Shown piece after piece: positions 10,278 to 44,787 of a stretch of 64,000 nucleotides of DNA (positions within the stretch are counted from its first letter, which is position 1; each line of letters opens with the position of its first letter). Position numbers and translations under genes: made by a program. The stretch spans positions 228,724 through 292,723 of the IMG/VR virus record IMGVR_UViG_3300032053_000002; one strand, 5' to 3'. Under the pieces are notes generated by a model. That model made no database searches. It had not been told where the DNA came from and was given only the letters and a program-made list of their open reading frames with translations.

Positions 10278-11129
10278 TTATAAATATTTCTTCAGAAAGG
10301 TTATAAGTTTAGGAAGTTGTTCTTTTTTTATAAAAATTATTTCCCAGCGAGTTACTCCGTCCTGTTTCAGTACTATATCGTTTTCATTATCAACATACGC
10401 AATAATTGGCATCCCTTCCCCGACTTCTTTTGGATTGATGGTCTGCAAATCTTTTTTTTCTTTAATCAAATTTTTTAATTTCATTATGTTATCTCCCAGC
10501 CCTTTTTTCATTCTGAATCTTGTCGCCGCGGGAATCTCGCCAGGTAAGGCTCCAGGAACCCTATGTCGCGACCCCATTCCCGGCGGAACTTTTACGTTAC
10601 GTTTCAACATCGGCGACACCATGTGTTGAGCCCCCTTTTCAGAATCAGATCTTTCTTCACTTCCAACATAATCTTTTAGTGGAATGAACTGAATTTTATT
10701 TTTTCCGGCAGAAGAATCCCATTTATCGTTATTCCTTTTACTGTTGGGATTTATCATTTTTTCATGTTTACTTATAATAACTTCTATACGATATTTCGGG
10801 TCGTTAGAAATTTTTATATTTTTGCCAAGTTTTATATTTATTTCGGATTCCAGATCAGCGGCAACTTTTTTTATCATATTCTTTGGCGGATATTGCCAGA
10901 AAGAAATTATTTTCTTATTTGTCCATACTCTCCCAGGATATTTAAAATTTTCTCGATCTGCATGGGAGTGCATATCATCATAGTATTGACGAATATTATT
11001 ATGTGTCCCACTACTAACTCTCATTTTGTTTTTATAGTATCCAAAGCAAATTGCGCTATTGTCCCCCCAACTCAATCCCTTTTTGTCGATAAAATCCGGA
11101 CTTTCTAATATTTTTTTTAATTTAATCAT
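10278..11129 (-). CDS. Hypothetical protein with an internal second leader (MKLKNLIKE at 10484)
   Basis: 283-aa ORF with RBS; N-terminus MIKLKKILES. Confidence 0.7.
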   Translation of the reverse strand: MIKLKKILESPDFIDKKGLSWGDNSAICFGYYKNKMRVSSGTHNNIRQYYDDMHSHADRENFKYPGRVWTNKKIISFWQYPPKNMIKKVAADLESEINIKLGKNIKISNDPKYRIEVIISKHEKMINPNSKRNNDKWDSSAGKNKIQFIPLKDYVGSEERSDSEKGAQHMVSPMLKRNVKVPPGMGSRHRVPGALPGEIPAATRFRMKKGLGDNIMKLKNLIKEKKDLQTINPKEVGEGMPIIAYVDNENDIVLKQDGVTRWEIIFIKKEQLPKLITFLKKYL

Positions 11130-11153
11130 TTTTTATTTTCTCACCTATCTCCT

Positions 11154-11161
11154 TATAAATA
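11154..11161 (-). promoter_or_regulatory. Candidate late-promoter octamer TATTTATA
   Basis: 24 nt upstream of 11129. Confidence 0.6.
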
Positions 11162-11208
11162 TAAAGATTATTTGTTTTTTTAGAACCGAGTGTTTTTTTA
11201 TTTTTTTA

Positions 11209-11216
11209 TATTTATA
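11209..11216 (+). promoter_or_regulatory. Candidate late-promoter octamer TATTTATA driving kamA
   Basis: 31 nt upstream of ATG 11248; orientation flips with the gene. Confidence 0.6.
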
Positions 11217-11247
11217 CACTACGTTTAAAATAAAAGAGGGAATAAAA

Positions 11248-17768: not shown

Positions 17769-17848
17769 TTTCACTCCTTTAGTAGTTATTTTGACCTTAT
17801 ATGTATAGATATGAAATAAAATAAAAAAAGTTCCATTTTTTGTAAAAT

Positions 17849-22484: not shown

Positions 22485-22784
22485 TTATACGGTAATACCA
22501 TAATTATTGCAGAAGATATATAATTTATTGGTTGCGTCATCAACAAGTTTGGAAACGACTTTGAATTCAGATTTGGCTTTCGCTCTACTTAGCTTGGGCA
22601 TTTTCTTTCCAGTAAACCGAGGTTCTTCGTCAAAATCTATTTCTTCCTCCAAATCAATGTCCTTTAATGCGTCCATAGTGTTTTCCAGACGATAATAGAG
22701 TTCTCCAAGAGAATCCGCATATCCTTCCTTTAACAATTTTTGTTTTTCTTCTTTAATTATTTTCACCAATTCGGATTTTTTCAT
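22485..22784 (-). CDS. Hypothetical protein with MKKSEL leader
   Basis: MKKSELVKIIKEE. Confidence 0.75.
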   Translation of the reverse strand: MKKSELVKIIKEEKQKLLKEGYADSLGELYYRLENTMDALKDIDLEEEIDFDEEPRFTGKKMPKLSRAKAKSEFKVVSKLVDDATNKLYIFCNNYGITV

Positions 22785-22796
22785 TTTAATTTCCCC

Positions 22797-23411
22797 TTAA
22801 ATATATCCCATTACCATCAACCACGACGGCGAACCGTAAGGATCGACACCATCCGGTTCAACCGTTTTTCCCACCACACTTTTCGATCTACCACTATTAA
22901 CCATTCTTTCAAGCGCTGAAAGTGATGGTGGTTTGCTTACACCGCGAACATATTTATACAAATTCTGAGTTAAGACGGCAATTTTGTTTTCATTGCCACC
23001 GCTAATTTTATAAATATACGTAACTCTATAATCTTTTGGCGTCCACTCTAGCACAACGTCTTCGCCAGATTTTATTTCAAACCCCTTTTTGCTCTTAACA
23101 TCTTTTAACGTAGTTGTCGTGAATGTTAAATGATGAGACACTCCTTCGTTCTTTGACTCTTCTATTCGCGTAAGAAGTTCTACAGGAACAGATGGGATGC
23201 CCATGACTAACGATACAGGATTTCCAGAGTAAACATCCGCAGTTACTCCATTAACAGTTTTCACTATCAGCACGCCTCTTCCGCGTTGAATCTCAGATTT
23301 AACTATTCTCAGCCAGTGTTTACCGACAACAGGTCCCATTTCTTTTGCGACTTTATTTAACTTCACATTATCAATTTTTACTTTGTCGCCAGGTTTAATT
23401 TTTTGTTGCAT
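22797..23411 (-). CDS. Hypothetical two-module protein
   Basis: 204 aa; modules separated at SKNE. Confidence 0.7.
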   Translation of the reverse strand: MQQKIKPGDKVKIDNVKLNKVAKEMGPVVGKHWLRIVKSEIQRGRGVLIVKTVNGVTADVYSGNPVSLVMGIPSVPVELLTRIEESKNEGVSHHLTFTTTTLKDVKSKKGFEIKSGEDVVLEWTPKDYRVTYIYKISGGNENKIAVLTQNLYKYVRGVSKPPSLSALERMVNSGRSKSVVGKTVEPDGVDPYGSPSWLMVMGYI

Positions 23412-23641
23412 TAGTTACTCTCCCGTTTAATTTTATTTTTATAAAAAGGATATTTTGCAGAGATTAAATCTTTTACGTTTGCAAGATCTTTTTTATCTAC
23501 AAACAAATACCCGTTTTCAAAATAGAAATTCTTTTTATCTATTCCATTTTCTTCCAAGTAACTCGTTACTTCTCTTTCCAGACCTTCTTTCAGCAGAGTA
23601 AATTCTTCTTTAATTATTTTATGGAGCTCGGATCTTTTCAT
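23411..23641 (-). CDS. Hypothetical protein with MKRSEL leader
   Basis: MKRSELHKIIKEE; AAGGAG RBS. Confidence 0.75.
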   Translation of the reverse strand: MKRSELHKIIKEEFTLLKEGLEREVTSYLEENGIDKKNFYFENGYLFVDKKDLANVKDLISAKYPFYKNKIKRESN

Positions 23642-23653
23642 TTAATTTTCTCC

Positions 23654-24304
23654 TTACATTTCGTCATCTTTTCGCCAGTATTTCGCGAGTTCTTTTTCGG
23701 CTTTTGGAGCGGCGCTATTTATATCATCTTTCAGATTTTGCATCACATCTTTCAGATATTGTTGTTTAGCAAAAGCGATTGCGCCTTTAACATCTCTCTT
23801 TTCGTAAAACTTTCGCTCGTTCATACCGATAGCGATTAAACCATCAACAATTTTTGGCTCTGGAAAATTCAGGAATTCTTCTTTGGAAAGTTCTTTCAAC
23901 AGTTGTTCTTTGATAAGACTTCGCAATTCGGATTTTTTCATTTTATTTCTCTCCTCAGCAATAATTCCGGCGTATCCATAAGATGTTCGTTTCCCTTTAG
24001 GCGCGATGGAGTGTCCATCAAACCACCATTTATCGGGATTATTTACAATGGCATCAACTTTTCCGAAATACTTTTTTTTATCAATGACGCCGTATCCCTT
24101 GATATAATAAAGTTTATTATCGGAATCCATCATAAACTTCCCGCTTCTCTGAACATCTATTTTAATATAGCTTTTTCCGGGTTTGACTTTAACCTGCCAG
24201 TCCGGCTCGAAAATTTGCCATTTATCTGGCGAAAAGTTCATATAGTATTCTTTTACTCGCTTCTCTAGAATTTCAGCGAATTTTTTCGCAAGTTGAACGT
24301 CCAT
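23654..24304 (-). CDS. Hypothetical protein with internal MKKSEL leader at 23941
   Basis: 216 aa; internal GAGGAG-preceded in-frame ATG. Confidence 0.7.
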   Translation of the reverse strand: MDVQLAKKFAEILEKRVKEYYMNFSPDKWQIFEPDWQVKVKPGKSYIKIDVQRSGKFMMDSDNKLYYIKGYGVIDKKKYFGKVDAIVNNPDKWWFDGHSIAPKGKRTSYGYAGIIAEERNKMKKSELRSLIKEQLLKELSKEEFLNFPEPKIVDGLIAIGMNERKFYEKRDVKGAIAFAKQQYLKDVMQNLKDDINSAAPKAEKELAKYWRKDDEM

Positions 24305-24305
24305 A

Positions 24306-24680
24306 TTACATACTCTGTTTCTTTTTGGTGCTGAATTGCGAGAACTTATTTTTATCCAAGTCCAACATATCAGTTAATCTTTTGAAAAGATATTCCAGTT
24401 TGTTTCTTGGAAAATTATATTTCGCCAATTCTTTTGACAATCTACCGAGTAAAAGTTCTACGTTCCCCGGAAGAGTAACTTCGGTTTCATTTACTTCTGT
24501 TTTTATCGGATTGCCTTCTTCATCAAGAACTTTTTTTCCATCTTTATCAAATTGACCTGGAAGCCCTTTGAAAGTAAAATTATCTTTTCTTTTCGGGGTT
24601 AATCCGAAAACACCGCCAACAGGTAGAAGCGAAGTAAGTAATACTATTCCTTCATTCAATTTTTTCTTATTCTTTTTCAT
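24306..24680 (-). CDS. Hypothetical protein
   Basis: Start at MKKNKKKLNEG after AGGAG. Confidence 0.65.
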   Translation of the reverse strand: MKKNKKKLNEGIVLLTSLLPVGGVFGLTPKRKDNFTFKGLPGQFDKDGKKVLDEEGNPIKTEVNETEVTLPGNVELLLGRLSKELAKYNFPRNKLEYLFKRLTDMLDLDKNKFSQFSTKKKQSM

Positions 24681-24696
24681 TTTGGTTTCTCCTATA

Positions 24697-25017
24697 TTAT
24701 TTATGAGTTGTTTTTCCAATAGTTACATCGAGAGATACATGCGCATCATCTGACCCCACCGCGGCCGCGTCTATCATAACGGTATACCCGCTATCAAAAA
24801 TGAATTCAACCACTTCACTGTCCCAAGTAGTATACGTGATTATTTTTTTAATTTTAGCGCCGCTGATTCTTGTTATCATGGCTTTATTTATCTTACCCAA
24901 CTTATCTCTGAGAACAATACCGGTATCATCCTCTTCAGCTTCATTTAATGCATCGGCTCTAAAATTCAGCCACTTTCTCCAGTCATATCCTTTTTTTTCT
25001 TCTACTTTTTTATTCAC
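24697..25017 (-). CDS. Hypothetical protein
   Basis: 106 aa, translationally coupled. Confidence 0.65.
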   Translation of the reverse strand: MNKKVEEKKGYDWRKWLNFRADALNEAEEDDTGIVLRDKLGKINKAMITRISGAKIKKIITYTTWDSEVVEFIFDSGYTVMIDAAAVGSDDAHVSLDVTIGKTTHK

Positions 25018-25505
25018 AATCGTTCTCCTTTTCTAAATCGTTCTAGCGGTCTAAGTGCGTTTTCCCACGATGGCTCCCCGAGTTTTTCAACAAACTTTAA
25101 TGCCTTGCCTACATCATCAACGTGAATCGCCAACGTTTTCAACCCGGGATGCGGTGACGTATTCATTATTTTCGCCCTAATTCCCCCGCCATTCAAATTG
25201 GCGACAAGATAACCTAATTGCTGTCTGGTATCAGAGAAAAAATTAACAACGTAATTTCCGATTACGCGATAAGTTGACGAATACTTTTCTGTTATTATTT
25301 CTCTAATTATCTCCCGAACAATTTCTTTTATTTTCGCCTTTTCCAAGTTTGCGTCATCCCATCCTTTGAGCCATTGCGCAAAAGTTTTTTCATTTTCACC
25401 GACTTCTCCGCGTATCAGTTTAATTAAAGTCGGGTCGTAAATCGGGATTCGTCTTTTTCTTTTCTTAAACGCATTTTTTCCAAGTTCGTATGCACGATTA
25501 CTCAT
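25014..25505 (-). CDS. Hypothetical protein with internal IVREIIREIITE motif
   Basis: 163 aa. Confidence 0.65.
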   Translation of the reverse strand: MSNRAYELGKNAFKKRKRRIPIYDPTLIKLIRGEVGENEKTFAQWLKGWDDANLEKAKIKEIVREIIREIITEKYSSTYRVIGNYVVNFFSDTRQQLGYLVANLNGGGIRAKIMNTSPHPGLKTLAIHVDDVGKALKFVEKLGEPSWENALRPLERFRKGERL

Positions 25506-25506
25506 T

Positions 25507-25806
25507 TTATTTTCGCCCGAAATACTTCTTATAAATATCTAACGCCTCTTTTTCATCAACAATTCCGGCTTTGACTAATTTGGAGTAATAATCCGATTTT
25601 TCAGAAAGATGATCTAGTGCGATTTCTGTAGCAACTTTTTCATCGTCAGTATGCTCTTTTTCTACAGCGACACCAATCTCAAGCTCTTTTGGATCAACAT
25701 CTTTCGGATTTAATTTGTCGCCCTTGCCTCCGGATATTTTGTCGCCCTCTATCTCGTTGACCAATGAATTTTTATAAAGCAATCTATTCCAGAGTTTTTT
25801 GTCCAT
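25507..25806 (-). CDS. DUF5661-like protein
   Basis: ELEIGVAVEKEHTDDEKVATEIALDHLSEKSDYYSKL; family name from recall. Confidence 0.65.
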   Translation of the reverse strand: MDKKLWNRLLYKNSLVNEIEGDKISGGKGDKLNPKDVDPKELEIGVAVEKEHTDDEKVATEIALDHLSEKSDYYSKLVKAGIVDEKEALDIYKKYFGRK

Positions 25807-25809
25807 AGA

Positions 25810-26064: not shown

Positions 26065-26079
26065 TATGTTTTCTCCAAT

Positions 26080-26292: not shown

Positions 26293-26304
26293 TCGTCTTC
26301 TCCC

Positions 26305-26532: not shown

Positions 26533-26533
26533 A

Positions 26534-27312: not shown

Positions 27313-27326
27313 CTATATATCTGATT

Positions 27327-27638: not shown

Positions 27639-27639
27639 T

Positions 27640-29276: not shown

Positions 29277-29299
29277 TTTGTTACTCCTTATATTAAATA

Positions 29300-29674
29300 T
29301 TAAACCCAGACCGTGCGTTTTTTATAAAGGTCAAATAGAACCGCCGCTATTTCCGCTCTAATCAGACTCTTTATCTCTTCATAATCCGCACTATCTAATA
29401 CCTCGTTTAGTTTTTCGCCTTTTTTTGTATTCGTATTTTCATATACTACTAAAGTATTTTTGTTAAGTTCTGCGGCGACATCTTGACCATCATACCAGGT
29501 AAATCCACTAACTTCTTTTTCTTCTTTTCCATATTTTACTTTTAGTTTTTCTAAATATTTTTCAGCTTCCGCTTTATCTTTTACACGAACCATAATTTTT
29601 CCTTTTAATGGAAATCCCTTGAATTCTTTTAAGATTTCATTTTTAATTATTTTCGCAAGTTCCAATTTTTTCAT
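29300..29674 (-). CDS. Hypothetical protein with leader variant
   Basis: MKKLELAKIIKNEILKE after GGAG RBS. Confidence 0.7.
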   Translation of the reverse strand: MKKLELAKIIKNEILKEFKGFPLKGKIMVRVKDKAEAEKYLEKLKVKYGKEEKEVSGFTWYDGQDVAAELNKNTLVVYENTNTKKGEKLNEVLDSADYEEIKSLIRAEIAAVLFDLYKKRTVWV

Positions 29675-29704
29675 CCGGTATTCTCCAATAATCAATCAAA
29701 GACT

Positions 29705-30055
29705 TTATTTTTTTACCTTTATCCTCGTAAATTCGGAACAATTTCCCCAAAATTTTTCAATTAGTCGATCTATTTGCACCGATAATTTACGTATCTCTTT
29801 ATAATCCGCTACCAATTTATCATAGTCATCGCGATTTAATATTCTCTTTATTCTAGTCAAGTTGCTTGCAAAATATTCAGTTCCTGTTTCAAGTGAAATT
29901 GATTTTTCATTTAGTATTTTCACGCTTTGCATAAATCCTTTCACAACAAATTTAATATTTTTTATATGATCTCCAACTCCGTGTAAAAAAAAGTTATCGG
30001 CGGCATTAACTTCAATTTCTTCCCTAATTATTTTTTTTAATTCTGATTTTTTCAT
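29705..30055 (-). CDS. Hypothetical protein with MKKSEL leader
   Basis: MKKSELKKIIREE. Confidence 0.75.
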   Translation of the reverse strand: MKKSELKKIIREEIEVNAADNFFLHGVGDHIKNIKFVVKGFMQSVKILNEKSISLETGTEYFASNLTRIKRILNRDDYDKLVADYKEIRKLSVQIDRLIEKFWGNCSEFTRIKVKK

Positions 30056-32102: not shown

Positions 32103-35100
32103 TTACTCATCATTTTCATTATTATTTACTTCTTTATTTTCTTTAGGTTTAGTTTTTGATTCTGAAAAGAAGTCTTTTAATTTGATTTCAAAATCGCCCT
32201 CAAATTCTTTTAGAATATCAGGTTTTGAAGTGGTGATAAGTCTTCTTCCCAAAACGGCTTCAGCGTGTTTTAACCTTCTGCTCAGGTGCTTATTTTTGTT
32301 TGCGTCATAATTTAGCTGAGTATCCAACTTTAATATCTTTTCATAATCTCGCTGCCCAAGTGGGTCGTCTCCAAACGGTTCATCCTTGTCGCGAGTTCTA
32401 AGTTTTTTTCCACGGCGACCATCATCGGATGGATTTACCGGTTCGTATTCTTCTTTCTTTTTATCTGCGGAACCACTACTTTCAGTCTTATCATAATTTA
32501 AATTAAACTTTTCATTTCTTCCCGCTTCATCAGTCTCTTCCCCGCCAAATGTCTGGTCTGTTTTCGCCGGGTCGTTTCCTTCGGTTTCTATTTGCGATAA
32601 CCTAAACGCTAATTTTGCGTCTTCTACTACCTGTTCTTTTTCTTCCGCAATTTCATCTTCCGTCATATTGAAAATATTTTTGTAAATCCAATATGTGCTT
32701 CTCATTTTTGTATCTTTCGCGTCTCTGGCGAGAGAAATTTTAGAGTTCCACAATTCAACCTTTTCTTGTTCGTAAATAATGCTCGGAATGGTCAGCTCCA
32801 ATTCAAAATCAACAAGGTCGCTCCCCTTAAATCCCTGAATGAATAAATGAACCAATGCAATTTTAGTCAGTTCAGAAATAATTACTTTTTGAAGTCGTTC
32901 AACAGTGCGACTAAACCGAACATCCTGGGATGCAAGAGTTGCTTTGCTATTATGCACAATCACTCCGGCGTCAGTTGCAAAATTAGAATACTCTTCTATT
33001 GTTATATCGCAAGTATTTTTTCGTTCAGTTAAAAACTCAACACTAACTACTTTATGATTTAATACGTATTTATGAATAAATCTTTTATTATTCATCGCCA
33101 ATAACATATTTTCGCAAATAAATGTTTCTTTATTGATGCCGAATCTGTCAAAAAGTTTGTATAATGTTTTAATGTCGGTGAGACCTAACCGATGTCTTAA
33201 TTCCTTAAATGATTTACTGTTTTTTGCAGCATCCAATAAGTTTTCATATTGTACTTTTGTATATTTTATATTATCAATTCTATCGTTGCCATAATCTTTG
33301 CAAGAACATTCAAATGAACAATACTTCCTATTTCTACCAAGTTCTGCCCAAAATTCTTTTCCGCAACATACACATTTTCTATTTTCTCCAGTTTTCATAT
33401 CATTATGATAACATTCATAACTACAGTATTTAGCATTTCTATCTCTATATGGGTAAGTATAAAATGACTTACCACACGATTCGCAATTAATATATTTTCC
33501 ACTTTTTTGACCTTTTTTAAGATTTTGATGGTATCGCCTATGCCCCCAATAATCCATCGAGCAATCAAAGTTTTCAGGATAATTATTTTCTTTTGTAAAA
33601 TCTTTATGATGAACCACACATCCGCTACCCTTTTTGACTAATCCATAATGTTCGGCAACAACTCTGTGTACTTCTTTGTATTTCTCATTATTTGGTTGAT
33701 AAACAGTGGAATACCCCCTATCAGTTTCATTCAAATACAACGGCATTAAACTTTGACCGACCAATAAGTCTTTCGCCTCGACCCATCTTCCATCGCGAGT
33801 CAGAAACTTATGGTCAGAAGTGCAATCAATATATTTTTCGTTATCTAATTTTACTCTTACCAATTCCGCATTTTTTCTAGTGAATCCGGCCCAAGTAATT
33901 TTTCCAGGAACAATGCTATTCGTTTTTTGGTTTATAGAATATGCATAATTAGTTATTCCATTTTCATAATCTTTGATAAGTTCCGCAACAGTTTTAGTTT
34001 TACCATTCAATAGAGGTATTTTTGTTTCAGGAACTATACAATTAAGCGCTTCTTCGTAGCCAAGAAAAGCTTTCGGAACTTTTAACGCGGCCATTAATTT
34101 ATCTTTTAAATACGCGATATCGTCTATCGCGTTATATTCAAGCCCCGCCAACGATTCGATAGAAGTCCCGCTATCTCCACCACGAACCGGTAAATAAAAG
34201 TCTTCCGTGATATTTTGCATATTAAATTTTAGGTTATATTCGCCAGTGGATTCGTCAATATACGGAATCTTTTTAACTTTATTCATAATCACTTCCATAT
34301 ACGCATCAACTTCGTTAGGCGCAAGATTTCCAACGTCTATTTTGAATACCCTTTTTTCTGGCGCACGCATAATACGATGAATAAGCATTGCGTCTTCCAT
34401 AAGTATAAGTTGTTTCCAGACTCGGCGAGCACCTTCTATTATCGAGTTATGTACCACAAATCCTTCAGCGACAAAATTGTGCAAACTATTATCTATCTGA
34501 ATATCATATACATCATCTTTTCCGATATATTCTATGCTTTGTACTTTTTCTACAGCATAATTTTCGCTGATTTTTTTATAGTCGCGAGATTTTTCTCTAA
34601 AAGTAAATAAACACATTCCTTTATTTTCTGATTTAGCACCCCAGGTGCGAGTAACCGAAAATCCCGCCTGGACTGCTAAGGCGCGGGAATCTTGCATCAA
34701 TTTATAATTCACAGTTCCGATTTGCCAAAGTCCTTCGCTAATATCACAACCATCGGCATCGGCAAATCCATACAAAAATTCTTTTTTGGTATTGGCATCT
34801 AATCTCCAAATCCACTCCGGAACTTCTTTATTAAAAGAACCTGTTATAAATCCCAACTGTTCAAATAATTTATAAAAATAAACAGAATTCACAACACAAG
34901 ATGAATCCGATTTCAACTCATTTGTTAATCTATAATTTATACCTAATTTTTCTATAAAATCTAAATACTTTTTGCTTTTATCTAGTCTGTCGCCAATAGA
35001 AAAACAAACTGTTTTATTTGACTTGTCTAACCAACCATCTCCAATCATAAAACCGAAAAATCTGACAAAATCATTAAAATTATCTTTTAATATGTTTTCA

Positions 35101-36125
35101 TCAATAATTTTTAATTTGGAATCGTATTTCCAATTTTCGCTTTCTTCCACTATCAACTTAGGATATGACTTTTCTATATTCGCAACTGGAAACATCAAAT
35201 GGTCGTTTACTGTAAGTTCAGAAACCAGTTTATATTTACCGTCTTCAGTCATTATTGGATGACTTTCAGTAGCATATAAAGTTTGATGAGCAGTTTTAAT
35301 TTTGTATATTTCCTTTCTTCCAGAATAAATAGTTTTTATAACACGAGATTTCAACAATTTTTCATCGTTATAATCAAACGAAAAAACTTCGTCGTTTTCT
35401 TCCACGTCTTTTATATTTTTAATTCCAGAAGAAGTCCAGACTTTACTGTCCCATCTTAAACATTTACCATACGGAAGAAAGTTACTATCACTATTCAGTC
35501 TAAAATGCGCAACCTGAAATTTTTCAAATTCCGCTTTTCCGGTCATTCCTTGTAAAACAAACTTCACCTCGTCGGGCTTTTTCGGGTCTATTCCTTCCAA
35601 CCGTGTCACTTCATAAACCGGAAGAGGCATTACTCCAGTTACACCATATTCTTTCGCCAAGTCCAAGTATAAAAAATAATCGCCATATTTGCACATTCCC
35701 CGAACCCACGTCGGTAAATTAAATTCTATATTCATTATATCGTAAAAAAGATTTTCTAACACTTCTCGAACACTTTTTGTTCCCGATTTTATTCTCAAAA
35801 TATATCCCATTTCATTTTTTAATGTGCTCTCTTCTGAGAAAACATCGAGTGCAGCAGATATAATTGCGTCCATATCCATAACTTCATAATCTCTAAACAG
35901 TTGCAATCTTGCAGCAGTAACTCCGTAGGGAGTTCCCTGGGCGAAAGTTCCATAACTTAGCGTAGAATACAAACGAGTGTATTTATCATTCATTCGTCTG
36001 TCGCCGATTTTCTGCACCGAGTCTATATCAACTACGCGCAGACGGCGACCACCGATGTTACGAACTACTACATCACTGGAAAAAAATCTTTTTAATCTAT
36101 TAAAAATGTTGTCATTAGTTGCCAT
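32103..36125 (-). CDS. Portal protein (T4 gp20-like) with two inteins
   Basis: FRDYEVMDMDAIISAALD, EDAMLIHRIMRAPEKRVFKIDVGNL, EDFYLPVRGG, DVRFSRTVERLQ; 637 aa after splicing. Confidence 0.95.
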   Translation of the reverse strand: MATNDNIFNRLKRFFSSDVVVRNIGGRRLRVVDIDSVQKIGDRRMNDKYTRLYSTLSYGTFAQGTPYGVTAARLQLFRDYEVMDMDAIISAALDVFSEESTLKNEMGYILRIKSGTKSVREVLENLFYDIMNIEFNLPTWVRGMCKYGDYFLYLDLAKEYGVTGVMPLPVYEVTRLEGIDPKKPDEVKFVLQGMTGKAEFEKFQVAHFRLNSDSNFLPYGKCLRWDSKVWTSSGIKNIKDVEENDEVFSFDYNDEKLLKSRVIKTIYSGRKEIYKIKTAHQTLYATESHPIMTEDGKYKLVSELTVNDHLMFPVANIEKSYPKLIVEESENWKYDSKLKIIDENILKDNFNDFVRFFGFMIGDGWLDKSNKTVCFSIGDRLDKSKKYLDFIEKLGINYRLTNELKSDSSCVVNSVYFYKLFEQLGFITGSFNKEVPEWIWRLDANTKKEFLYGFADADGCDISEGLWQIGTVNYKLMQDSRALAVQAGFSVTRTWGAKSENKGMCLFTFREKSRDYKKISENYAVEKVQSIEYIGKDDVYDIQIDNSLHNFVAEGFVVHNSIIEGARRVWKQLILMEDAMLIHRIMRAPEKRVFKIDVGNLAPNEVDAYMEVIMNKVKKIPYIDESTGEYNLKFNMQNITEDFYLPVRGGDSGTSIESLAGLEYNAIDDIAYLKDKLMAALKVPKAFLGYEEALNCIVPETKIPLLNGKTKTVAELIKDYENGITNYAYSINQKTNSIVPGKITWAGFTRKNAELVRVKLDNEKYIDCTSDHKFLTRDGRWVEAKDLLVGQSLMPLYLNETDRGYSTVYQPNNEKYKEVHRVVAEHYGLVKKGSGCVVHHKDFTKENNYPENFDCSMDYWGHRRYHQNLKKGQKSGKYINCESCGKSFYTYPYRDRNAKYCSYECYHNDMKTGENRKCVCCGKEFWAELGRNRKYCSFECSCKDYGNDRIDNIKYTKVQYENLLDAAKNSKSFKELRHRLGLTDIKTLYKLFDRFGINKETFICENMLLAMNNKRFIHKYVLNHKVVSVEFLTERKNTCDITIEEYSNFATDAGVIVHNSKATLASQDVRFSRTVERLQKVIISELTKIALVHLFIQGFKGSDLVDFELELTIPSIIYEQEKVELWNSKISLARDAKDTKMRSTYWIYKNIFNMTEDEIAEEKEQVVEDAKLAFRLSQIETEGNDPAKTDQTFGGEETDEAGRNEKFNLNYDKTESSGSADKKKEEYEPVNPSDDGRRGKKLRTRDKDEPFGDDPLGQRDYEKILKLDTQLNYDANKNKHLSRRLKHAEAVLGRRLITTSKPDILKEFEGDFEIKLKDFFSESKTKPKENKEVNNNENDE
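32949..34040 (-). mobile_element. Intein 2 in portal (HNH endonuclease + Cys-rich repeats), 364 aa
   Basis: N-terminus CIVPETKIPLLNG, block B DCTSDHKF, C-terminus GVIVHN followed by Ser; core VHRVVAEH...VVHHKDFTKENN. Confidence 0.92.
34446..35462 (-). mobile_element. Intein 1 in portal (LAGLIDADG endonuclease), 339 aa
   Basis: N-terminus CLRWDSKV, block B ATESHPI, FFGFMIGDG and FLYGFADADG, C-terminus FVVHN followed by Ser. Confidence 0.93.
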
Positions 36126-39721: not shown

Positions 39722-39722
39722 C

Positions 39723-41300
39723 TTATATCGCTTTATTGGTTTCGGCGCTTCCTATCTGAGTCACTCTTTTTTTCGCACGTTTACGGCTAAGCCCTCCAGG
39801 AATTTCGTTAAACATAACGAATTTTAGCTCTTCCCGAACCAACTGACGAACTTTCTGAACTTCTTTGCTTTCTTTCGCAACGATTTGATCGCGTTTTTTT
39901 GCTTTCAATCTTTTTGTCGGGTTATATTCTGGCTCACCCGCTGCCTGAGAAACTGGCTCAAGAGTTTCTTTTTTAATTTTTTCATCTTTGCATTCAGATT
40001 TGCCTTTCCAATTTTTTTCCACGTATGAAAAGAATTCATCTTTTTTGTCGCCTAAGTCGGCTGGCGATTTTGCACCGAACTTCTCAAGTGCGTCTTTGAA
40101 GAATTGCTGATATTCATTGGTTTCTTCTGCCAAGACTTCTTTGATAAGCCCTTTTAATTCTGACATTTTGATCTTCATCGTATTTTCTCCTAGTTGATTA
40201 TTTTCGTTCTTTTTATTTTTTATTGCGTGTCCTTCAAATCCATACGCAATTTTCCAAGCATCGTCTCTGTCAATTTGCGGATTTGCTTTCATTATCGCTC
40301 TTGCCATTGAAGTAGCATCGGGATATACGACAGCTAAAGCGGATTTAATTGCGTTTTCAAATTTCTTTTCCTGAGCTGCGGAAACTTCCTTTATCATCGT
40401 ATTCTCTCCTTGTTGTATATTTTCTTTTATCATCACAGTATTATTGCCACTAAATTGCAAATCTAATACTGTTTTATGTCCTTGTTGTTGCATATATTTT
40501 GCAAATTTTTGAGCGTCGGTTTTGTCGCTAAAACGGAATTCCAATCCTTCTTTTCCTTTACTAACCGGTTTCCCAACAGATACCAATTTCATTTTTTTAG
40601 CAACTGGTAAACCGTCGTCAAGTGCCTTTTTGAATTTTTTTGGAATAGGACTCGTTATGCGAAATTTAGGTTTTTGTTTAGCACCGGTTACGTCACCCGC
40701 TTTCGTTTTTTGTCCCGAAACAGTTACTACGGTATTGGGTCTAACCTCGTGTTTTTCAGAGTATTTTGTAAATTCATCTTTATCCGCAAATTCTAATTCT
40801 TTCAATGAATTTTCTTTTATTGCCACATAATCTTTAGTCCGTAATTTATCTTCCAAATTTATCGGGGATATTCTTGCAGATTTTATTTGTTTATCATCTG
40901 GAATAATCATATAATTAAAATTTTTATCGTCATATTTTATTGTCGCAGTCAACCACCCCTTTCCAGAACCTTTGTAGAATTTTTCAAACTTTATTCTAAA
41001 CGGTTTCAAATGCGCAGAAAGTTTATTTAATCGCGACAAATTATATTTTCCGCCTTCATTCATTTTATTTTCTCCTAATCGTTTTATATTCGCCGGTATT
41101 TTACCGCCTTTTTTCGCCATGTCTTTTTTCAGATCGTCATAGGCGTCAGCGTCAATACCGTGTTCAGTCTCGTTCCATTCTTTCGCTTTGGCGACCAACC
41201 CATCTAAAGTTAAATCACCATTTTCTACATCTACCAAGCCTTCCATATCAGCCTTTCGTTTCGCGTTTTTATTCTTAAAATAATTTATTGGATAGCTCAT
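39723..41300 (-). CDS. Multi-module (polyprotein-like) hypothetical protein
   Basis: 525 aa with three internal RBS + ATG junctions (41063, 40397, 40178). Confidence 0.75.
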   Translation of the reverse strand: MSYPINYFKNKNAKRKADMEGLVDVENGDLTLDGLVAKAKEWNETEHGIDADAYDDLKKDMAKKGGKIPANIKRLGENKMNEGGKYNLSRLNKLSAHLKPFRIKFEKFYKGSGKGWLTATIKYDDKNFNYMIIPDDKQIKSARISPINLEDKLRTKDYVAIKENSLKELEFADKDEFTKYSEKHEVRPNTVVTVSGQKTKAGDVTGAKQKPKFRITSPIPKKFKKALDDGLPVAKKMKLVSVGKPVSKGKEGLEFRFSDKTDAQKFAKYMQQQGHKTVLDLQFSGNNTVMIKENIQQGENTMIKEVSAAQEKKFENAIKSALAVVYPDATSMARAIMKANPQIDRDDAWKIAYGFEGHAIKNKKNENNQLGENTMKIKMSELKGLIKEVLAEETNEYQQFFKDALEKFGAKSPADLGDKKDEFFSYVEKNWKGKSECKDEKIKKETLEPVSQAAGEPEYNPTKRLKAKKRDQIVAKESKEVQKVRQLVREELKFVMFNEIPGGLSRKRAKKRVTQIGSAETNKAI

Positions 41301-41879: not shown

Positions 41880-42125
41880 TCACAATCCTAAAACAATTTT
41901 GATTACGAACGCCAAAAGAACTCCGCCGGCACCTGCCAATAGGCCCCACAACCCGGATTTTATTTGTAAAGAAGTTATATCATTATCCAGTGCACTTATC
42001 TTGTTCAGCAACTCGATCACGTTTTTTCGCAAGTTTTCGTTCTCCGTTTTGAGTTCCCGTACACTTTCAATGATATAAATTTTATATTTATCCCAATCAG
42101 TTCCGTTACTAAGTTCATTACCCAT
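41880..42125 (-). CDS. Coiled-coil + C-terminal TM protein (holin/XhlA-like candidate)
   Basis: C-terminal GLWGLLAGAGGVLLAFVIKIVLGL. Confidence 0.55.
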   Translation of the reverse strand: MGNELSNGTDWDKYKIYIIESVRELKTENENLRKNVIELLNKISALDNDITSLQIKSGLWGLLAGAGGVLLAFVIKIVLGL

Positions 42126-42465
42126 TATCTTCGTCTTCTTCTGATCCGAGTATTTTCAGTTTTCCAGGGTTGTTCGGATCGGGAATAACATCACCATCCG
42201 ATTTATTACACAACGAATCAACCGTATATCCGGCCGTAAATACACCAACCACACTCAACCCACCCGTCGCGATCAATGATGCGTATAAAACTATTGCGGA
42301 AATACAGGTAACAAGCGTATTCTTAAAATGACTACTAAAATACTGTTTAATATCTGCGAATGTTTCGCCCAATATTTTTTTCTTTAGAAAGTGACTAAGA
42401 ACTCCCAGCCACAATACAATAAAGTATAAAAAATAAATTAAAATTTGCATCCAATCGATATTCAT
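42118..42465 (-). CDS. Multi-TM membrane protein (holin-like candidate)
   Basis: Two to three TM segments and an acidic C-terminal tail. Confidence 0.55.
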   Translation of the reverse strand: MNIDWMQILIYFLYFIVLWLGVLSHFLKKKILGETFADIKQYFSSHFKNTLVTCISAIVLYASLIATGGLSVVGVFTAGYTVDSLCNKSDGDVIPDPNNPGKLKILGSEEDEDNG

Positions 42466-43037
42466 GACTTTTCTCCCAATTCTTGTTTTTCTTCTTTTTC
42501 TATTTTTTCAAGTTCAGAGTCAACAAATTTTAGCTCATTTTCCCAGAACTCTTTTATTTTTTCGTCGACCGTCCACTTTTCAAATTCGCCTTTTTCATTT
42601 ACAAACTCAATATATCCTTTTTTCATTTCTTCAAGATAATTCCCGATCTCCGCTTTCGCTTCCGAATAAAACCCCCTTTGTTTGCTTCTAATATATTGTT
42701 TTTCATATTGCTGAAAAGTTCCTTCGGTTATCATTTTCGCGTCTCGTTCAATTAAGCAACTTAAGCAAAATCCGAACTTCCAGTAAACATGCATATCTTT
42801 TGATGCTTTACCGAGAACATTTTTGCATTTAGGGCAAAACAATGGAATATTCGCATCTATTTTCGGAACTTTTACTTTATAACCGTTTTTTTGTTCCCAT
42901 TCCCCATTCTCGTCTTCCCACACATCACCTATTTGATGCAACGTTCTTATATTTGGATTGATATACCCAACTTGGACTTTGGGATTTTCTCCGCGCAAAA
43001 CCGAGCGGATTCGTTTAGGATAAATATATTTGCTCAT
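42462..43037 (-). CDS. Zinc-binding hypothetical protein
   Basis: CPKC...CLSC. Confidence 0.7.
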   Translation of the reverse strand: MSKYIYPKRIRSVLRGENPKVQVGYINPNIRTLHQIGDVWEDENGEWEQKNGYKVKVPKIDANIPLFCPKCKNVLGKASKDMHVYWKFGFCLSCLIERDAKMITEGTFQQYEKQYIRSKQRGFYSEAKAEIGNYLEEMKKGYIEFVNEKGEFEKWTVDEKIKEFWENELKFVDSELEKIEKEEKQELGEKS

Positions 43038-43815
43038 TTTTAACTCCTATAAATTTCTTTTTGGTCATTGATAATTTATATTTTTCATTTCTTTCTTTTT
43101 GTCTTTTATCGGCTTCATTTTTACCATACTTATTTAACCAAATAGAGTATATTGATCTACCATACATAGGATTCTTTTTGCCTCTATTTAAACCTGGATG
43201 CTTTTTACCATAATTAGGATTATCATTATTTGCTCCATATTTTTTATGCCATTCACTCATTTTCTTTTTAGTTTCTTCTGGGTGATGTTTTCCGAAAAAT
43301 GGATTGTTTTCTCCAGACATTCGTATTGATAATTCCGGAAATTTCTTCCCAAAATTAGGATGATTCTTACCTATTCTTTTTTTATTTATTTCTGATAGAT
43401 CAGGTCTTTTCTTACCGTACATGGGATGATTTTTTCCAGTTCTACCATACATACCATTTTTTTTACCACGGCAACTCATCGCGGGCCACGCGCCATTATT
43501 TGCCCAATCATTCCTCTTATAAATTTTTTTATTTACTTTGACTTCATATTTTCGCGCTTCGTCTATTGTATCAAAAGTCCAACGCAATTTCCACTCAAAA
43601 TTATTAGGATTTTTCTTAAATTCCTCTTGAAATGTGCCACTTGTAAAATAATTTTTAGAAAAATCATCCGCCGGACAGATTTTAGAAAAAACGTTAGCAT
43701 ATCTCAATCCATGATATTTTAACCCATCAGATTTCCGTTTAATAAAATATGTATATGGTTTTATTTTAGTAAAATGTTTTGTCTTCAATTTGTTCGCTCT
43801 TTTTTTATAATGCAT
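43015..43815 (-). mobile_element. GIY-YIG-like homing endonuclease with NUMOD3 repeats
   Basis: YTYFIKRKSDGLKYHGLR...YFTS...ARKYE...N; repeated GKNHPMYGK/GENNPFFGKHH. Confidence 0.75.
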
Positions 43816-43842
43816 TTCATTTTTCTAGCCATAATAACTCCT

Positions 43843-44787
43843 TTATGATAATACTACGGTGATGTCGTATCTGTCTAGTGGATCTTCTACACTTCCCGCT
43901 CCAGCGGCGTGTAAACTTCCGTATATTTTTTTAATCTTGCCTTGTTTATCGTGGAACTCAATTTCAAAATTCCAAATTTTACCGGTGGGAGTATTCCAAC
44001 CGATAGAGCCATCTTTCGCATGTGTGTATGTGGCTTTTGTTGTATTCCACTGCAAATTCATTTTTTCAAATTCTTTCCAGATTTTATTTACGCCTTCCCA
44101 GCTATCATCTTTGAAAATCCCCTTTGTAAGCGGGGTTATTTTTTTATAGATGTATCGTTTCGCAGTCTCTTTATCTTTTCCATCTATTTCAGATTCAGTT
44201 TGTTCTCTGAGAACTTTTTTAATTTCTTCGCGAATGATTTCCCTAAGTTTTAAATTTTTCATTGTAGTGTTTTCCTTTACTTTTTTTATTTTTTTCGCCT
44301 TGTTTTTTACTATTTCGTATGGAACTAATTTCTTTCCAGTTGGGATTTTTAATCCTTTCATCCCACCGATAAAATCTATATTTCCGCCCGGAATAGTCAT
44401 TCTTTCCCTATGGTTCATTTCAACATAATCTTCGCTACCGTCTTTATATTTTACTCTGTAAAGAACCTTGGGCGACACTTCTTCTTTTAGTATACCGCGA
44501 TTCCTGAACCATTGTTTATAAAATTGCGGAATAAATCCTTCAAATTTTACATCATACTCTTTTAAGAGCGTCCAATACGCTTCCATTTGCATACTCGGTC
44601 GCTCGTTATTTTGCGATGTGCTCGGCACCAACTTATACCAATTATCTTTTTTCTCAACAACTAAATGATGCGCAAACATACTATCAAATTTAACTCCCAT
44701 TTCATCTATTTTATATTTTTTAGTAATTTCATTAAAAAATTCTTCGTTTACCCACAGTTGATAATTTTCAAACTTTGCGACATACAT
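43843..44787 (-). CDS. Multi-module hypothetical protein with internal leader at 44262
   Basis: Internal MKNLKLREIIREEIKKVLRE. Confidence 0.72.
   Translation of the reverse strand: MYVAKFENYQLWVNEEFFNEITKKYKIDEMGVKFDSMFAHHLVVEKKDNWYKLVPSTSQNNERPSMQMEAYWTLLKEYDVKFEGFIPQFYKQWFRNRGILKEEVSPKVLYRVKYKDGSEDYVEMNHRERMTIPGGNIDFIGGMKGLKIPTGKKLVPYEIVKNKAKKIKKVKENTTMKNLKLREIIREEIKKVLREQTESEIDGKDKETAKRYIYKKITPLTKGIFKDDSWEGVNKIWKEFEKMNLQWNTTKATYTHAKDGSIGWNTPTGKIWNFEIEFHDKQGKIKKIYGSLHAAGAGSVEDPLDRYDITVVLS

What the first reader, a model, noticed from the sequence alone, without database searches (positions are those of the whole stretch)
10278..44787. Polyprotein-like ORFs made of in-frame fused cassettes that keep their RBS and ATG
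Seen: long ORFs contain internal in-frame ATGs preceded by Shine-Dalgarno sequences that are read through as protein. 39723..41300 has three (LGENK-M 41063, QGENT-M 40397, LGENT-M 40178). Others are 23941 (GAGGAG), 27129 (AAGGAG CACAAA, nearly identical to the true RBS of the next gene at 26770), 44262 and 10484; most are followed by the leader. Modules elsewhere end in xNE or xxE. Inference: separate cassettes fused by stop-codon loss and are tolerated because the prohead protease cuts them apart, and/or nested isoforms are co-translated.
Basis: partly seen in the sequence, partly recalled or inferred. Interest (0 to 1): 0.7.

Follow-up and report, generated by a model that had tools for sequence, protein, structure and literature searches.

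The report
Phage head cassettes fused in frame
In an uncultured T4-like giant phage, several long genes are strings of small, separately mobile head-region gene cassettes joined in frame at their old ribosome-binding sites and start codons, so gene boundaries here can switch between separate genes and one polyprotein.

Summary
The window is the last 64 kb of a 292,723-bp sediment-metagenome contig of a T4-like jumbo phage. It encodes a gp20-like portal with inteins, a gp23-like capsid protein, a T4-type TerL and a Peptidase_S77 prohead protease.

Five minus-strand ORFs hold seven in-frame ATGs preceded by GGAG-type Shine-Dalgarno sequences. Four are followed by the leader MKKSELxxIIxEE or a variant of it.

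The modules are independent units:
- Each is stand-alone, or joined to different partners, in relatives.
- AlphaFold gives separate domains, with disordered linkers exactly at the junctions.
- A 99.7%-identical strain and two further metagenomes lack exactly one 219-nt cassette. The breakpoints lie in a 16-nt SD-ATG repeat found only three times in the genome.
- Unfused boundaries nearby have the same layout with a stop codon, such as TAA GGA GAA AAT TAA ATG.

At the best-sampled junction GGAG and ATG are invariant in 11 of 11 divergent orthologues while the encoded residues vary. This is conservation at the nucleotide level.

Cassette fusion is well supported. Internal initiation has only this indirect support, and cutting by the prohead protease is inferred and untested. 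I rate this a new variant of the T4 internal-protein and capsid-targeting theme.

The parts
39723..41300 (-). 525-aa ORF of four cassettes: A (aa 1-79, 41064-41300), B (aa 80-301, 40398-41063; itself two sub-domains), C (aa 302-374, 40179-40397), D (aa 375-525, 39723-40178; starts with the leader variant MKIKMSELKGLIKEVL)
   Evidence: Translation. Modules hit different sets of relatives, many starting at residue 1 of the relative. The AlphaFold model has confident separate domains with pLDDT below 50 at residues 81-85, 298-304 and 357-375, and pTM 0.34.
41061..41076 (-). Junction A|B: the 16-nt SD-spacer-ATG element AGGAGAAAATAAAATG, read as (L)GENK-M
   Evidence: It is the highest-scoring internal ATG of the genome on a start-site matrix.
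40395..40410 (-). Junction B|C: AGGAGAGAATACGATG, read as (Q)GENT-M. It is the left direct repeat flanking cassette C.
40176..40191 (-). Junction C|D: AGGAGAAAATACGATG, read as (L)GENT-M. It is the right direct repeat flanking cassette C.
   Evidence: The orthologous junction keeps GGAG and ATG in 11 of 11 relatives.
40179..40397 (-). Cassette C, 219 nt (73 codons), present or absent between strains
   Evidence: Strain contig L187 is 99.7% identical but lacks exactly these 219 nt. A joint 40185->40405 skipping 219 nt is seen in contigs of metagenomes X3 and X4.
23654..24304 (-). 216-aa ORF: leaderless N-module (aa 1-121), junction ..IIAEERNK|M at ATG 23941 with GAGGAG, then a leader-bearing C-module (MKKSELRSLIKEQ)
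   Evidence: Relative P0166 (149 aa) has the N-module plus a leader-like helix without M, and then stops. Contigs of X2 and X3 cover the junction without indels.
26767..27312 (-). 181-aa ORF: small N-module (aa 1-61), junction ..KKEHK|M at ATG 27129 with AAGGAG, then a leader-bearing C-module (MKKSELRQIIKEE)
   Evidence: The N-module is a stand-alone 60-75-aa ORF in L002 and L066, has its own leader in L087, is fused to a leader plus a different cargo in L086, and lies inside large ORFs in L025, L026, L048 and L052.
43843..44787 (-). 314-aa ORF: N-part (aa 1-175), junction ..VKENTT|M at ATG 44262 with AAGGAA, then a C-module with the leader variant MKNLKLREIIREEI and a cargo domain ending GAGSVEDPLDRYDIT
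   Evidence: The cargo domain is a stand-alone 107-152-aa gene with other leaders in about 15 metagenome loci, and is fused to unrelated N-parts in others. Residues 103-167 of the N-part have a stand-alone 81-aa paralogue at genome 27066-27311.
10278..11129 (-). 283-aa ORF with junction ..GLGDNI|M at ATG 10484 (GGGAG). It has the same junction type, but the modules cannot be tested.
   Evidence: It has no relatives other than itself.
27640..28257 (-). Prohead protease, T4 gp21 family, in the middle of the cassette array
   Evidence: PF03420 Peptidase_S77, E 1.4e-30. phrog_207, E 3.5e-58.
22485..30055 (-). Array of tightly packed small cassette genes between the portal and the capsid gene. Canonical-leader starts are at 22784, 23641, 26292, 26770, 29276, 29674 and 30055 (another lies at 36573). 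Variants start at 27638, 28824 and 31138. Members of a second leader family, MDKKLWxKLL, start at 25806 and 26064 (also 36822).
23639..23656 (-). Example of an unfused boundary with the same layout as the fused junctions: TAA GGA GAA AAT TAA ATG. Others are 26062-26082 (TAA ATT GGA GAA AAC ATA ATG), 22782-22799 and 22015-22032.
   Evidence: Of 38 boundaries, 10 are in frame, and 7 of those are separated by a single stop codon.
32103..36125 (-). Context: gp20-like portal with inteins. The gp23-like capsid protein is at 17914-19545 and the T4-type TerL at 37390-38988.

Best explanation
SHOWN. The head region of this T4-like jumbo phage carries an array of small cassette genes. Most begin with a short conserved leader peptide, MKKSELxxIIxEE; a second type begins MDKKLWxKLL. 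Cassette boundaries are compact and stereotyped: stop codon, GGAG, about 8 A-rich nt, ATG. They are often in frame with the upstream gene. The seven flagged sites are such boundaries without the stop codon, so the SD and spacer are read as x-G-E-N-(K/T) and the old start codon as M. The cassettes are independent units of folding, of domain shuffling among relatives, and of gain or loss within the population. The gain or loss happens by recombination between the repeated SD-ATG elements.

INFERRED, likely. GGAG and ATG at the junctions are kept by selection on the nucleotides. I therefore expect ribosomes to start at the first codon and also at the internal sites, giving nested products. The same short repeats also serve as recombination joints.

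INFERRED, plausible. The leader works like the T4 capsid targeting sequence. It would take its cargo, and any leaderless module fused in front of it, into the prohead core. The gp21-type protease would then cut after the [I/L]-x-E at the leader's end and after the [L/I]-x-E often found just before the junction, freeing the modules. That would explain why loss of a stop codon is tolerated.
For: Junction layout equals true starts:
- GGAGAAAATAAA-ATG is also the start context of neighbouring genes in relatives.
- Unfused boundaries in the window read TAA GGA GAA AAT TAA ATG and similar.

Modules are stand-alone or re-partnered:
- Module D starts at residue 1 in more than 15 relatives. In P0007-P0017 it is the last module behind different partners.
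- Module A is stand-alone in several relatives, in P0026 with the canonical leader.
- The N-module of ORF 26767-27312 is re-partnered in several ways.
- The cargo of ORF 43843-44787 likewise.
- Relatives P0014 and P0007 have several further junctions of the same type..ENK|M.
- L104 is a leader-cargo-leader-cargo fusion.

Other lines:
- Folding: separate domains with disordered junctions.
- Population: an exact 219-nt cassette indel between 16-nt repeats.
- Nucleotide-level conservation: the junction Gly codon is GGA in 10 of 10 sequences, against 8 of 28 at three other conserved Gly columns. GGAG is kept even where E became D or N became S. GGA is 38% of Gly codons in the window's genes.
- The leader is normally N-terminal: 82 of 87 non-redundant copies. 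Its synonymous codons vary, so it is a peptide-level motif.
- Protease context: the S77 protease gene lies inside the array. [LI]xE falls in the 9 aa before 14 of 27 junctions, against a 12% background.
- T4 precedent: a 10-residue CTS with processing determinants at residues 8 and 10, packaged CTS fusions, and an internal second start in gene 21 (PMC9026906).
Against: - There are no expression, proteome or cleavage data for this phage or any close relative.
- Some junctions in relatives have a degraded SD (AAAGAA, GAAGAA) but keep x-E-N-K-M. That fits a peptide-level role or simple descent.
- Other multi-module proteins here carry leader-like helices with no M or SD (22030-22470 and 25014-25505; P0166). 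The start signals are therefore not always kept.
- One canonical leader and several leader-like genes lie among baseplate genes, not head genes.
- Junctions 27129 and 44262 have no [LI]xE just upstream.
- The orthologous junctions are related by descent, so the codon statistics overstate independence.
- T4's CTS has only been shown to work at an N-terminus.
Confidence: 0.6

Rival explanations
1. These are ordinary multidomain proteins. The fusions are real, but the SD-like and ATG sequences are only relics or linker codons. In this view there is no internal initiation and no cleavage, and the full-length proteins are the functional form.
For: - GGAG before an in-frame ATG occurs at 2% of internal ATGs by chance.
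- Many relatives of the 43843-44787 cargo domain are fused to other N-parts without any M, SD or leader at the joint.
- Fused forms of module D persist across relatives only 55-65% identical.
Against: - GGAG and ATG are invariant in 11 of 11 orthologous junctions while the encoded residues and spacer codons vary. Relics should decay at this divergence.
- The same 16-mer is repeated three times in one ORF and occurs nowhere else in the genome.
Confidence: 0.17
2. The junction is kept mainly as a peptide: a protease recognition site or linker of the form (L/I)-x-E|N-(K/T)-M. Its likeness to a ribosome-binding site would be a by-product of the codons for G-E-N.
For: - [LI]xE enrichment before junctions.
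- Junctions in L186 and L185 with a poor SD (AAAGAA, GAAGAA) still read I/L-K/E-E-N-K-M.
- Modules after the junction often begin M-N-E.
Against: - The Gly codon is always GGA.
- E-to-D and N-to-S changes keep GGAG but break the peptide motif (L191, L106 and L189).
- The residue before M varies among K, T and I.
- Unfused boundaries carry the same nucleotides between a stop codon and a start codon, where no peptide is made.
Confidence: 0.1
3. The SD-ATG repeats are kept mainly because they are the crossover points for cassette exchange. Every swap would re-install a canonical junction, so their conservation would say nothing about translation.
For: - The 219-nt cassette indel has its breakpoints inside the 16-nt repeat.
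- Different upstream partners are joined to module D at the same junction in relatives.
- Leader starts share exact runs of 20-24 nt.
- Short conserved motifs are known to mediate module shuffling in T4-type phages (PMC2839356, PMC4122927).
Against: - This view is compatible with the best explanation rather than exclusive of it.
- It does not explain why the joints are in frame and free of stop codons.
- A 16-nt homology is short for general recombination.
Confidence: 0.1
4. Artefact: sequencing or assembly errors removed stop codons or shifted frames in A-rich runs.
For: The junctions lie next to homopolymer runs such as ATGAAAAAATC.
Against: - Independent metagenome contigs from other samples cover the junctions with substitutions but no indels.
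- Independent assemblies encode the same fused proteins.
- Divergent relatives have the same in-frame junctions.
Confidence: 0.02

Closest known systems
T4 internal proteins (IPI-III, Alt) with the capsid targeting sequence, processed by the gp21 prohead protease (PMC9026906, PMC3012670; Mullaney & Black 1996, as cited there)
   Same: - Otherwise unrelated small proteins share only a short N-terminal peptide ending in I/L-x-E.
- The genes lie in a variable region of a T4-type head module that encodes an S77 protease.
- In T4, fusions behind the CTS are packaged and processed.
   Different: - The leader is longer (about 13-16 aa), and no sequence relationship to the T4 CTS was tested.
- There are many more cassettes, two or more leader types, and some copies outside the head module.
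- Cassettes are concatenated in frame with retained SD and ATG, so the leader is internal. Neither feature is described for T4.
- Targeting and cleavage are not demonstrated here.
Paralogous head and ejection proteins of giant phages phiKZ, 201phi2-1 and SPN3US with shared N-terminal propeptides cut after Glu (PMC5694885)
   Same: - It is a jumbo phage with many head-associated proteins of unknown function.
- N-termini are conserved among otherwise diverged paralogues. For example, SPN3US gp53 and gp54 share 15 identical N-terminal residues that contain the cleavage motif.
- Multiple cleavage motifs can lie within one propeptide.
   Different: - Those phages use an A/S/G-x-E motif and a diverged protease. 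Here the protease is a clear S77 family member and the motif is I/L-x-E.
- In-frame cassette strings with SD-ATG junctions are not reported there.
PeSL-mediated modular shuffling in hyperplastic regions of T4-type genomes (PMC2839356, PMC4122927)
   Same: Small genes of unknown function are gained, lost and swapped between close relatives by recombination at short conserved motifs that flank each cassette.
   Different: - PeSLs are promoter plus stem-loop motifs between genes.
- Here the repeated element is a 16-nt SD-spacer-ATG that lies inside a continuous ORF.
- No promoter-like or terminator-like sites beyond chance were found around cassette C.
Polyvalent proteins of phages and conjugative elements (PMC5512222)
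   Same: Several unrelated domains sit in one polypeptide encoded near virion genes. That polypeptide is proposed to be packaged and in some cases proteolytically processed.
   Different: - Polyvalent proteins are large and built from recognisable enzymatic or conflict domains, often with their own peptidase domain.
- Here the modules are 60-220 aa with no Pfam hit.
- The proposed cutting is by the separate prohead protease.
- Junctions keep translation start signals.
Nested in-frame genes in head-assembly modules: T4 gene 21 with its second start at Met45 (PMC9026906), and lambda C/Nu3 (from my own knowledge)
   Same: An in-frame internal start inside a head-module gene yields a shorter product that shares the C-terminus.
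   Different: - Those are single internal starts within one protein family.
- Here up to three junctions in one ORF, and more in relatives, separate unrelated modules that occur elsewhere as separate genes.

Membership tests
T4-type internal protein / capsid-targeting-sequence system | A gp21-family (Peptidase_S77) prohead protease is encoded in the head module | tested here: met
   ORF 27640-28257: PF03420, E 1.4e-30; phrog_207, E 3.5e-58. gp20-, gp23- and gp17-like genes flank it.
T4-type internal protein / capsid-targeting-sequence system | Otherwise unrelated small proteins share only a short conserved N-terminal peptide | tested here: met
   There are 10 strong leader copies in the window. 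In 1.8 Mb of own and related DNA, 82 of 87 non-redundant copies are N-terminal. The sequences downstream of the leader are unrelated. One cargo domain carries different leaders in different phages.
T4-type internal protein / capsid-targeting-sequence system | The leader ends in the protease motif (L/I)-x-E | tested here: met
   I-(K/R)-E lies at leader residues 10-12 in nearly all copies, and L-K-E a few residues later in the two exceptions. This is a sequence match only.
T4-type internal protein / capsid-targeting-sequence system | The proteins are packaged into the prohead through the leader, and the leader is cut off | not testable with these tools
   This needs virion proteomics or packaging assays. 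The phage is known only from metagenomes.
T4-type internal protein / capsid-targeting-sequence system | All members lie in the head module | tested here: not met
   One canonical leader gene (genome 29846-30127) and several genes with leader-like N-termini lie among baseplate-like genes at genome 27-30 kb.
PeSL-type modular shuffling | Cassettes are flanked by a conserved promoter plus stem-loop motif | tested here: not met
   The repeats flanking the polymorphic cassette C are 16-nt SD-ATG elements inside an ORF. The promoter and terminator scan of 39500-41500 found nothing above chance at those sites.
PeSL-type modular shuffling | Cassette presence or absence differs between near-identical genomes, with breakpoints in the flanking repeats | tested here: met
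   L187 is 99.7% identical and lacks exactly 219 nt. The joint is also seen in two other metagenomes.
Polyvalent proteins (Iyer et al. 2017) | Multiple recognisable effector or enzymatic domains, often with an embedded peptidase | tested here: not met
   The five ORFs have no Pfam family at E<=0.01. There is one weak PHROG hit of unknown function and no fold match at E<=0.001.
Nested in-frame genes (internal initiation) | An in-frame internal ATG with a start-like ribosome-binding site | tested here: met
   GGAG and ATG are conserved in 11 of 11 orthologues.
Nested in-frame genes (internal initiation) | A separate shorter product is made | not testable with these tools
   No RNA, ribosome or protein data were available.

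The most novel reading that the evidence does not exclude
The gene boundaries of this cassette family may be built so that a single stop codon toggles between operon and polyprotein. The stop, SD, spacer and ATG unit is in frame and dual-coded. When read through, it becomes a linker carrying a prohead-protease site, (L/I)-G-E|N. When used as a start, it makes the downstream cassette alone. In-frame fusion would then let leaderless cargo ride into the capsid on a neighbour's internal targeting leader, and the same 16-nt unit would serve as the recombination joint for swapping cassettes. That would be a general way for T4-like phages to diversify what they package and inject.
Probability: 0.3. 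Interest if true: 0.8.

Novelty: new variant of a known kind. Interest (0 to 1): 0.62.

Why it matters
If confirmed, gene boundaries in a phage hyperplastic region would not be fixed. The same short element would act as ribosome-binding site, start codon, inter-domain linker, recombination joint and possibly protease site.

- It would explain how leaderless proteins could be loaded into capsids.
- It would show how packaged-protein repertoires diversify quickly in the wild. The cassette indel is polymorphic in sediment populations.
- It would explain why automatic annotation of such regions either merges or splits genes.
- It would extend the T4 capsid-targeting idea to a large group of uncultured aquatic and sediment phages, in which the leader is widespread.
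- It would offer natural design rules for multi-cargo packaging in phage capsids.

Tried and rejected
- **Function of the modules.** Pfam gave nothing for the five ORFs. PHROGs gave one weak hit of unknown function. Foldseek of the ORF 39723-41300 model against PDB and BFVD gave no match at E<=0.001.
- **Leader on scaffold proteins.** I suspected that the roughly 330-aa leader-bearing ORFs just downstream of the protease in other T4-like loci were gp22 scaffolds. That would have tied the leader to the prohead core. They hit no PHROG, so I dropped the claim.
- **Close phage genomes.** Megablast against 50,697 phage records found nothing. The best capsid-protein relatives are only 53-58% identical.
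- **IMG/VR searches.** Searches with ORF 23654-24304 and ORF 43843-44787 found no relatives.
- **ORF 26767-27312.** The exact protein is not on record elsewhere.
- **ORF 10278-11129.** It has no relatives at all, so 10484 stays untested.
- **Start-site weight matrix.** It discriminated poorly. The median score was 3.3 for true starts, against a 99th percentile of 4.1 for internal ATGs. Only 41063 stood out.
- **Sequencing artefact.** Rejected.
- **Alternative genetic code.** Not considered further. Table 11 gives 88% coding density with compact genes.
- **Complex prediction.** No job was sent. A transient protease-substrate or leader-core contact was unlikely to give a usable verdict.
- **Length bias.** The search could only see proteins of 76-243 aa. 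I therefore repeated the question without a length limit. That search found both stand-alone and fused forms.

Full report
**What the window is**

The window is the last 64 kb (228,724-292,723) of a single 292,723-bp contig. The contig is a JGI sediment-metagenome scaffold. Almost all genes lie on the minus strand.

The head module is of T4 type:
- a gp20-like portal with inteins, 32103-36125
- a T4-type large terminase, 37390-38988
- a gp23-like major capsid protein, 17914-19545
- a Peptidase_S77 prohead protease, 27640-28257

The nearest capsid proteins in the phage collection are 53-58% identical. They belong to an uncultured huge phage, Microcystis phage Mel-JY01 and Flavobacterium phage immuto.

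Between the portal and the capsid gene, and again next to the terminase, lie about 30 tightly packed small ORFs of unknown function.

**The leader**

Many of these ORFs begin with MKKSELxxIIxEE(I/L). An HMM built from ten copies finds ten strong matches in the window and one elsewhere in the genome. Eight of the window's ten are at ORF starts and two are internal, at ATG 27129 and ATG 23941. Weaker variants start the ORFs at 27638, 28824, 31138 and 41833, and sit internally at 40178 and 44262. A second family begins MDKKLWxKLL.

Synonymous codons differ between leader copies, so the leader is conserved as a peptide. Across 1.8 Mb of this genome and fetched relatives, 82 of 87 non-redundant canonical leaders are N-terminal. 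The leader is widespread in uncultured phages, where it sits on unrelated downstream sequences.

**Checking the observation**

All seven named ATGs are in frame and preceded by GGAG-type motifs at the spacing used by true starts.

SD plus ATG alone is not rare. It occurs at 28 of 1374 internal in-frame ATGs, and 6 of those 28 are the named sites. The specific element is another matter. AGGAGARAATAMRATG occurs three times in the whole genome, all in frame in ORF 39723-41300, and its relaxed form otherwise marks true gene starts. The junction peptide pattern occurs six times inside long ORFs genome-wide, and five of those are the named sites.

Contigs from other sediment metagenomes cover the junctions at 23941, 27129, 41063 and 44262 with substitutions but no indels. 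Independent assemblies encode the same fused proteins.
- 44262 has a weaker SD.
- 10484 has only a vague leader.
- 40397 and 41063 are not followed by a leader.

**Are the modules separate cassettes?**

ORF 39723-41300 was scored against 1.84 billion representative proteins.

- Module D (aa 375-525) aligns from residue 1 of more than 15 relatives, for example P0020 and P0049. In the closest relatives (P0007-P0017) it is the last module behind different upstream partners of 58 to about 450 aa.
- Module A (aa 1-79) is stand-alone in several relatives. In P0026 it stands alone behind the canonical leader MKKSELKKIIEE. In others it is N-terminal or internal.
- The second half of module B starts proteins in P0008 and L106.
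- Relatives P0014 and P0007 contain several further junctions of the same type..GENK|M..KENK|M and ..EENK|M.

The AlphaFold model of the ORF has confident separate domains. Its pLDDT is below 50 at residues 81-85, 298-304 and 357-375, which are the junctions, and its pTM is 0.34.

The other ORFs give the same picture.

- ORF 26767-27312: the small N-module occurs in five arrangements:
  - a stand-alone 60-75-aa ORF in two phages
  - with its own leader in L087
  - inside a 170-aa Pelagibacter phage protein
  - inside large ORFs in four loci
  - fused to a leader plus a different cargo in L086
- ORF 43843-44787: the C-terminal cargo domain is a stand-alone 107-152-aa gene with other leaders (MDKKLW.., MKLKNL....AKELL..) in about 15 metagenome loci, and is fused to unrelated N-parts in others. 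Residues 103-167 of its N-part have a stand-alone 81-aa paralogue elsewhere in this genome.
- ORF 23654-24304: its one relative has the N-module followed by a leader-like helix without M and then a stop.
- ORF 10278-11129: it has no relatives.

**Cassette gain and loss in the population**

Contig L187 from another assembly matches ORF 39723-41300 with 4 mismatches in 1359 nt. It lacks exactly the 219 nt of cassette C, and the breakpoints lie inside the two 16-nt SD-ATG repeats. The same joint (40185->40405, skipping 219 nt) appears in contigs of two further metagenomes. A third shows assembly breaks at both repeats.

**Junctions compared with true boundaries**

In relatives, the internal junction sequence GGAGAAAATAAA-ATG is also the start context of neighbouring genes. 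In the window, unfused boundaries read:
- TAA GGA GAA AAT TAA ATG
- TAA ATT GGA GAA AAC ATA ATG
- TAA GGG GAA ATT AAA ATG
- TAA GGA GAT ACT AAA ATG

Of 38 boundaries, 10 are in frame, and 7 of those are separated by a single stop codon. Losing that stop gives exactly the observed x-G-E-N-x-M junctions. In the fused junctions, the codon before GGA is usually one substitution away from TAA or TAG (CAA, CAG, TTA or GAA). This agrees with stop loss but is weak evidence, because these codons are common here.

The junction at 27129 differs from the overlapping stop/start at 26770 by one base in length (AAGGAGCACAAA-ATG against AAGGAGCACAACG-ATGA). That is the difference between an in-frame and an out-of-frame arrangement.

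**RBS or peptide?**

I compared the orthologous junction before module D in 11 sequences that are 46-65% identical in protein.

- GGAG and ATG are invariant.
- The Gly codon is GGA in all 10 sequences of the codon alignment. At three other conserved Gly columns of the same sequences it is GGA in only 8 of 28. In the window's genes GGA makes up 38% of Gly codons.
- The following residues vary (E/D, N/S, K/T/I), and the E-to-D and N-to-S changes keep GGAG.

This is the pattern expected of an SD, a spacer and a start codon, not of a peptide motif. It is the main argument that the internal starts, or at least the nucleotide element, are under selection. The sequences are related by descent, so the probabilities are only indicative.

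Some evidence points the other way. Several junctions in L185 and L186 have a degraded SD (AAAGAA, GAAGAA) but keep (L/I)-x-E-N-K-M. [LI]xE falls within the 9 residues before 14 of 27 junctions, against 12% of background windows. By eye, it falls within 13 residues before about 22 of 27. A dual role as protease site is therefore plausible.

**How it most likely works**

Shown:
- Cassettes are independent units.
- Junctions are former boundaries.
- The SD-ATG repeats are sites of cassette gain and loss.

Inferred, likely: ribosomes start both at the first codon and at the internal sites, giving nested products.

Inferred, plausible: the leader acts like the T4 capsid targeting sequence. In T4, the first 10 residues of IPIII suffice for packaging, residues 8 and 10 determine processing, fusions are packaged and cleaved, and internal proteins share only this sequence (PMC9026906; PMC3012670). 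Here the leader has I-x-E at residues 10-12, and the S77 protease gene lies in the middle of the array.

In every fused ORF the last module carries the leader and the upstream modules do not. This fits leaderless cargo riding on a neighbour's leader and being freed by cleavage.

Caveats:
- There are no protein data.
- Some leader-like helices are internal without M.
- Some leader genes lie among baseplate genes.
- T4's CTS has been tested only at the N-terminus.

**Comparison with known systems**

The leader and protease logic matches two known cases. One is the T4 internal proteins. The other is the shared propeptides of giant-phage head paralogues (PMC5694885). Cassette turnover at short flanking repeats resembles PeSL-mediated shuffling (PMC2839356, PMC4122927), but the repeat here is an in-ORF SD-ATG, not a promoter plus stem-loop. 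The strings of unrelated domains recall polyvalent proteins (PMC5512222), but they lack recognisable effector or peptidase domains. Internal in-frame starts have precedents in head genes, such as T4 gene 21.

My literature searches turned up no description of two features:
- repeated, conserved, in-frame SD-ATG junctions that join otherwise separate cassettes
- the polymorphism of cassettes at such junctions

**Verdict**

- Observation: confirmed.
Cassette fusion is strongly supported, internal initiation indirectly, and protease cutting is inferred only.
- Novelty: a new variant of a known kind.
- Interest: 0.62.

Noticed in passing
window 32103-36125 (-), compared with L187:8957-9359: The portal gene here encodes 1340 aa, with an intein splicing domain plus HNH at about aa 703-1059 and a second HINT-like stretch at about aa 229-311. 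The near-identical strain L187 has a portal gene of 1001 aa with one intein. An intein therefore seems to be present or absent between strains.
   Followed up: no
window 25507-25806, 25810-26064, 36577-36822, 30073-30312 (-); genome 28847-29236: A second conserved leader family, MDKKLWxKLLxxNSL, sits on otherwise unrelated small proteins. In relatives it replaces the MKKSEL-type leader on the same cargo domain (P0157 and P0158 against the C-module of ORF 43843-44787). A third leader type, ..AKELVKIAKELLA.., appears on the same cargo domains in more distant phages (P0048, P0054, P0159, L200, L214).
   Followed up: partly
genome 27066-30127 (outside the window): A second small cluster of leader-type cassettes lies among baseplate-like genes. 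One ORF there starts MKKSELREMIR, another MIKLKKLFEIMP (compare MIKLKKILESPDF at the start of ORF 10278-11129), and another MDLKQWQKLL. This location does not fit a purely head-related role for the leaders.
   Followed up: partly
window 22030-22470 and 25014-25505 (-): Two more apparently two-module proteins have a leader-like helix in the middle (..EIKEMIRKIVREEVLK.., ..KIKEIVREIIREIITEK..) but no Met or SD there. The first begins with a DUF3008 domain. They may be older fusions that have lost the start signals.
   Followed up: no
window 43015-43815, 47258-48286, 9057-9938 (-): Three homing-endonuclease-like genes carry NUMOD3 motifs, and one also a GIY-YIG domain. They are scattered through the structural region. 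A relative's terminase gene (L185, 991 aa) carries a weak LAGLIDADG hit.
   Followed up: no
window 15939-17879 (-): A 646-aa ORF next to the capsid gene has weak, below-threshold matches to the Mom family and to a GNAT acetyltransferase in its C-terminal third.
   Followed up: no
L188:1650-2489 and the contig of P0016: In two relatives a papain-like peptidase gene (PF00112 Peptidase_C1) lies close upstream of the multi-module ORF that ends in module D, immediately upstream in L188. No such gene was seen at that place in the window.
   Followed up: no
window 39000-39383 and 39380-39721 (-): Two small ORFs lie between the multi-cassette ORF and the terminase. One has a transmembrane-like N-terminus and the other a signal-peptide-like N-terminus. 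The pair is conserved in position in relatives (L004, L187, L188, L192).
   Followed up: no
window 19562-20794 (-): The ORF before the capsid gene has an extremely acidic, low-complexity centre and an N-terminus MTKLLKESIAEAK containing I-A-E. From its position it is a likely scaffold or prohead-core protein, but it hits no Pfam or PHROG family.
   Followed up: no
window 23941 and 27129 (-): The two internal canonical leaders share the longest exact DNA run of any leader pair in the window: 24 nt, AAAATGAAAAAATCCGAATTGCGA. This hints at a recent common origin or at gene conversion.
   Followed up: no
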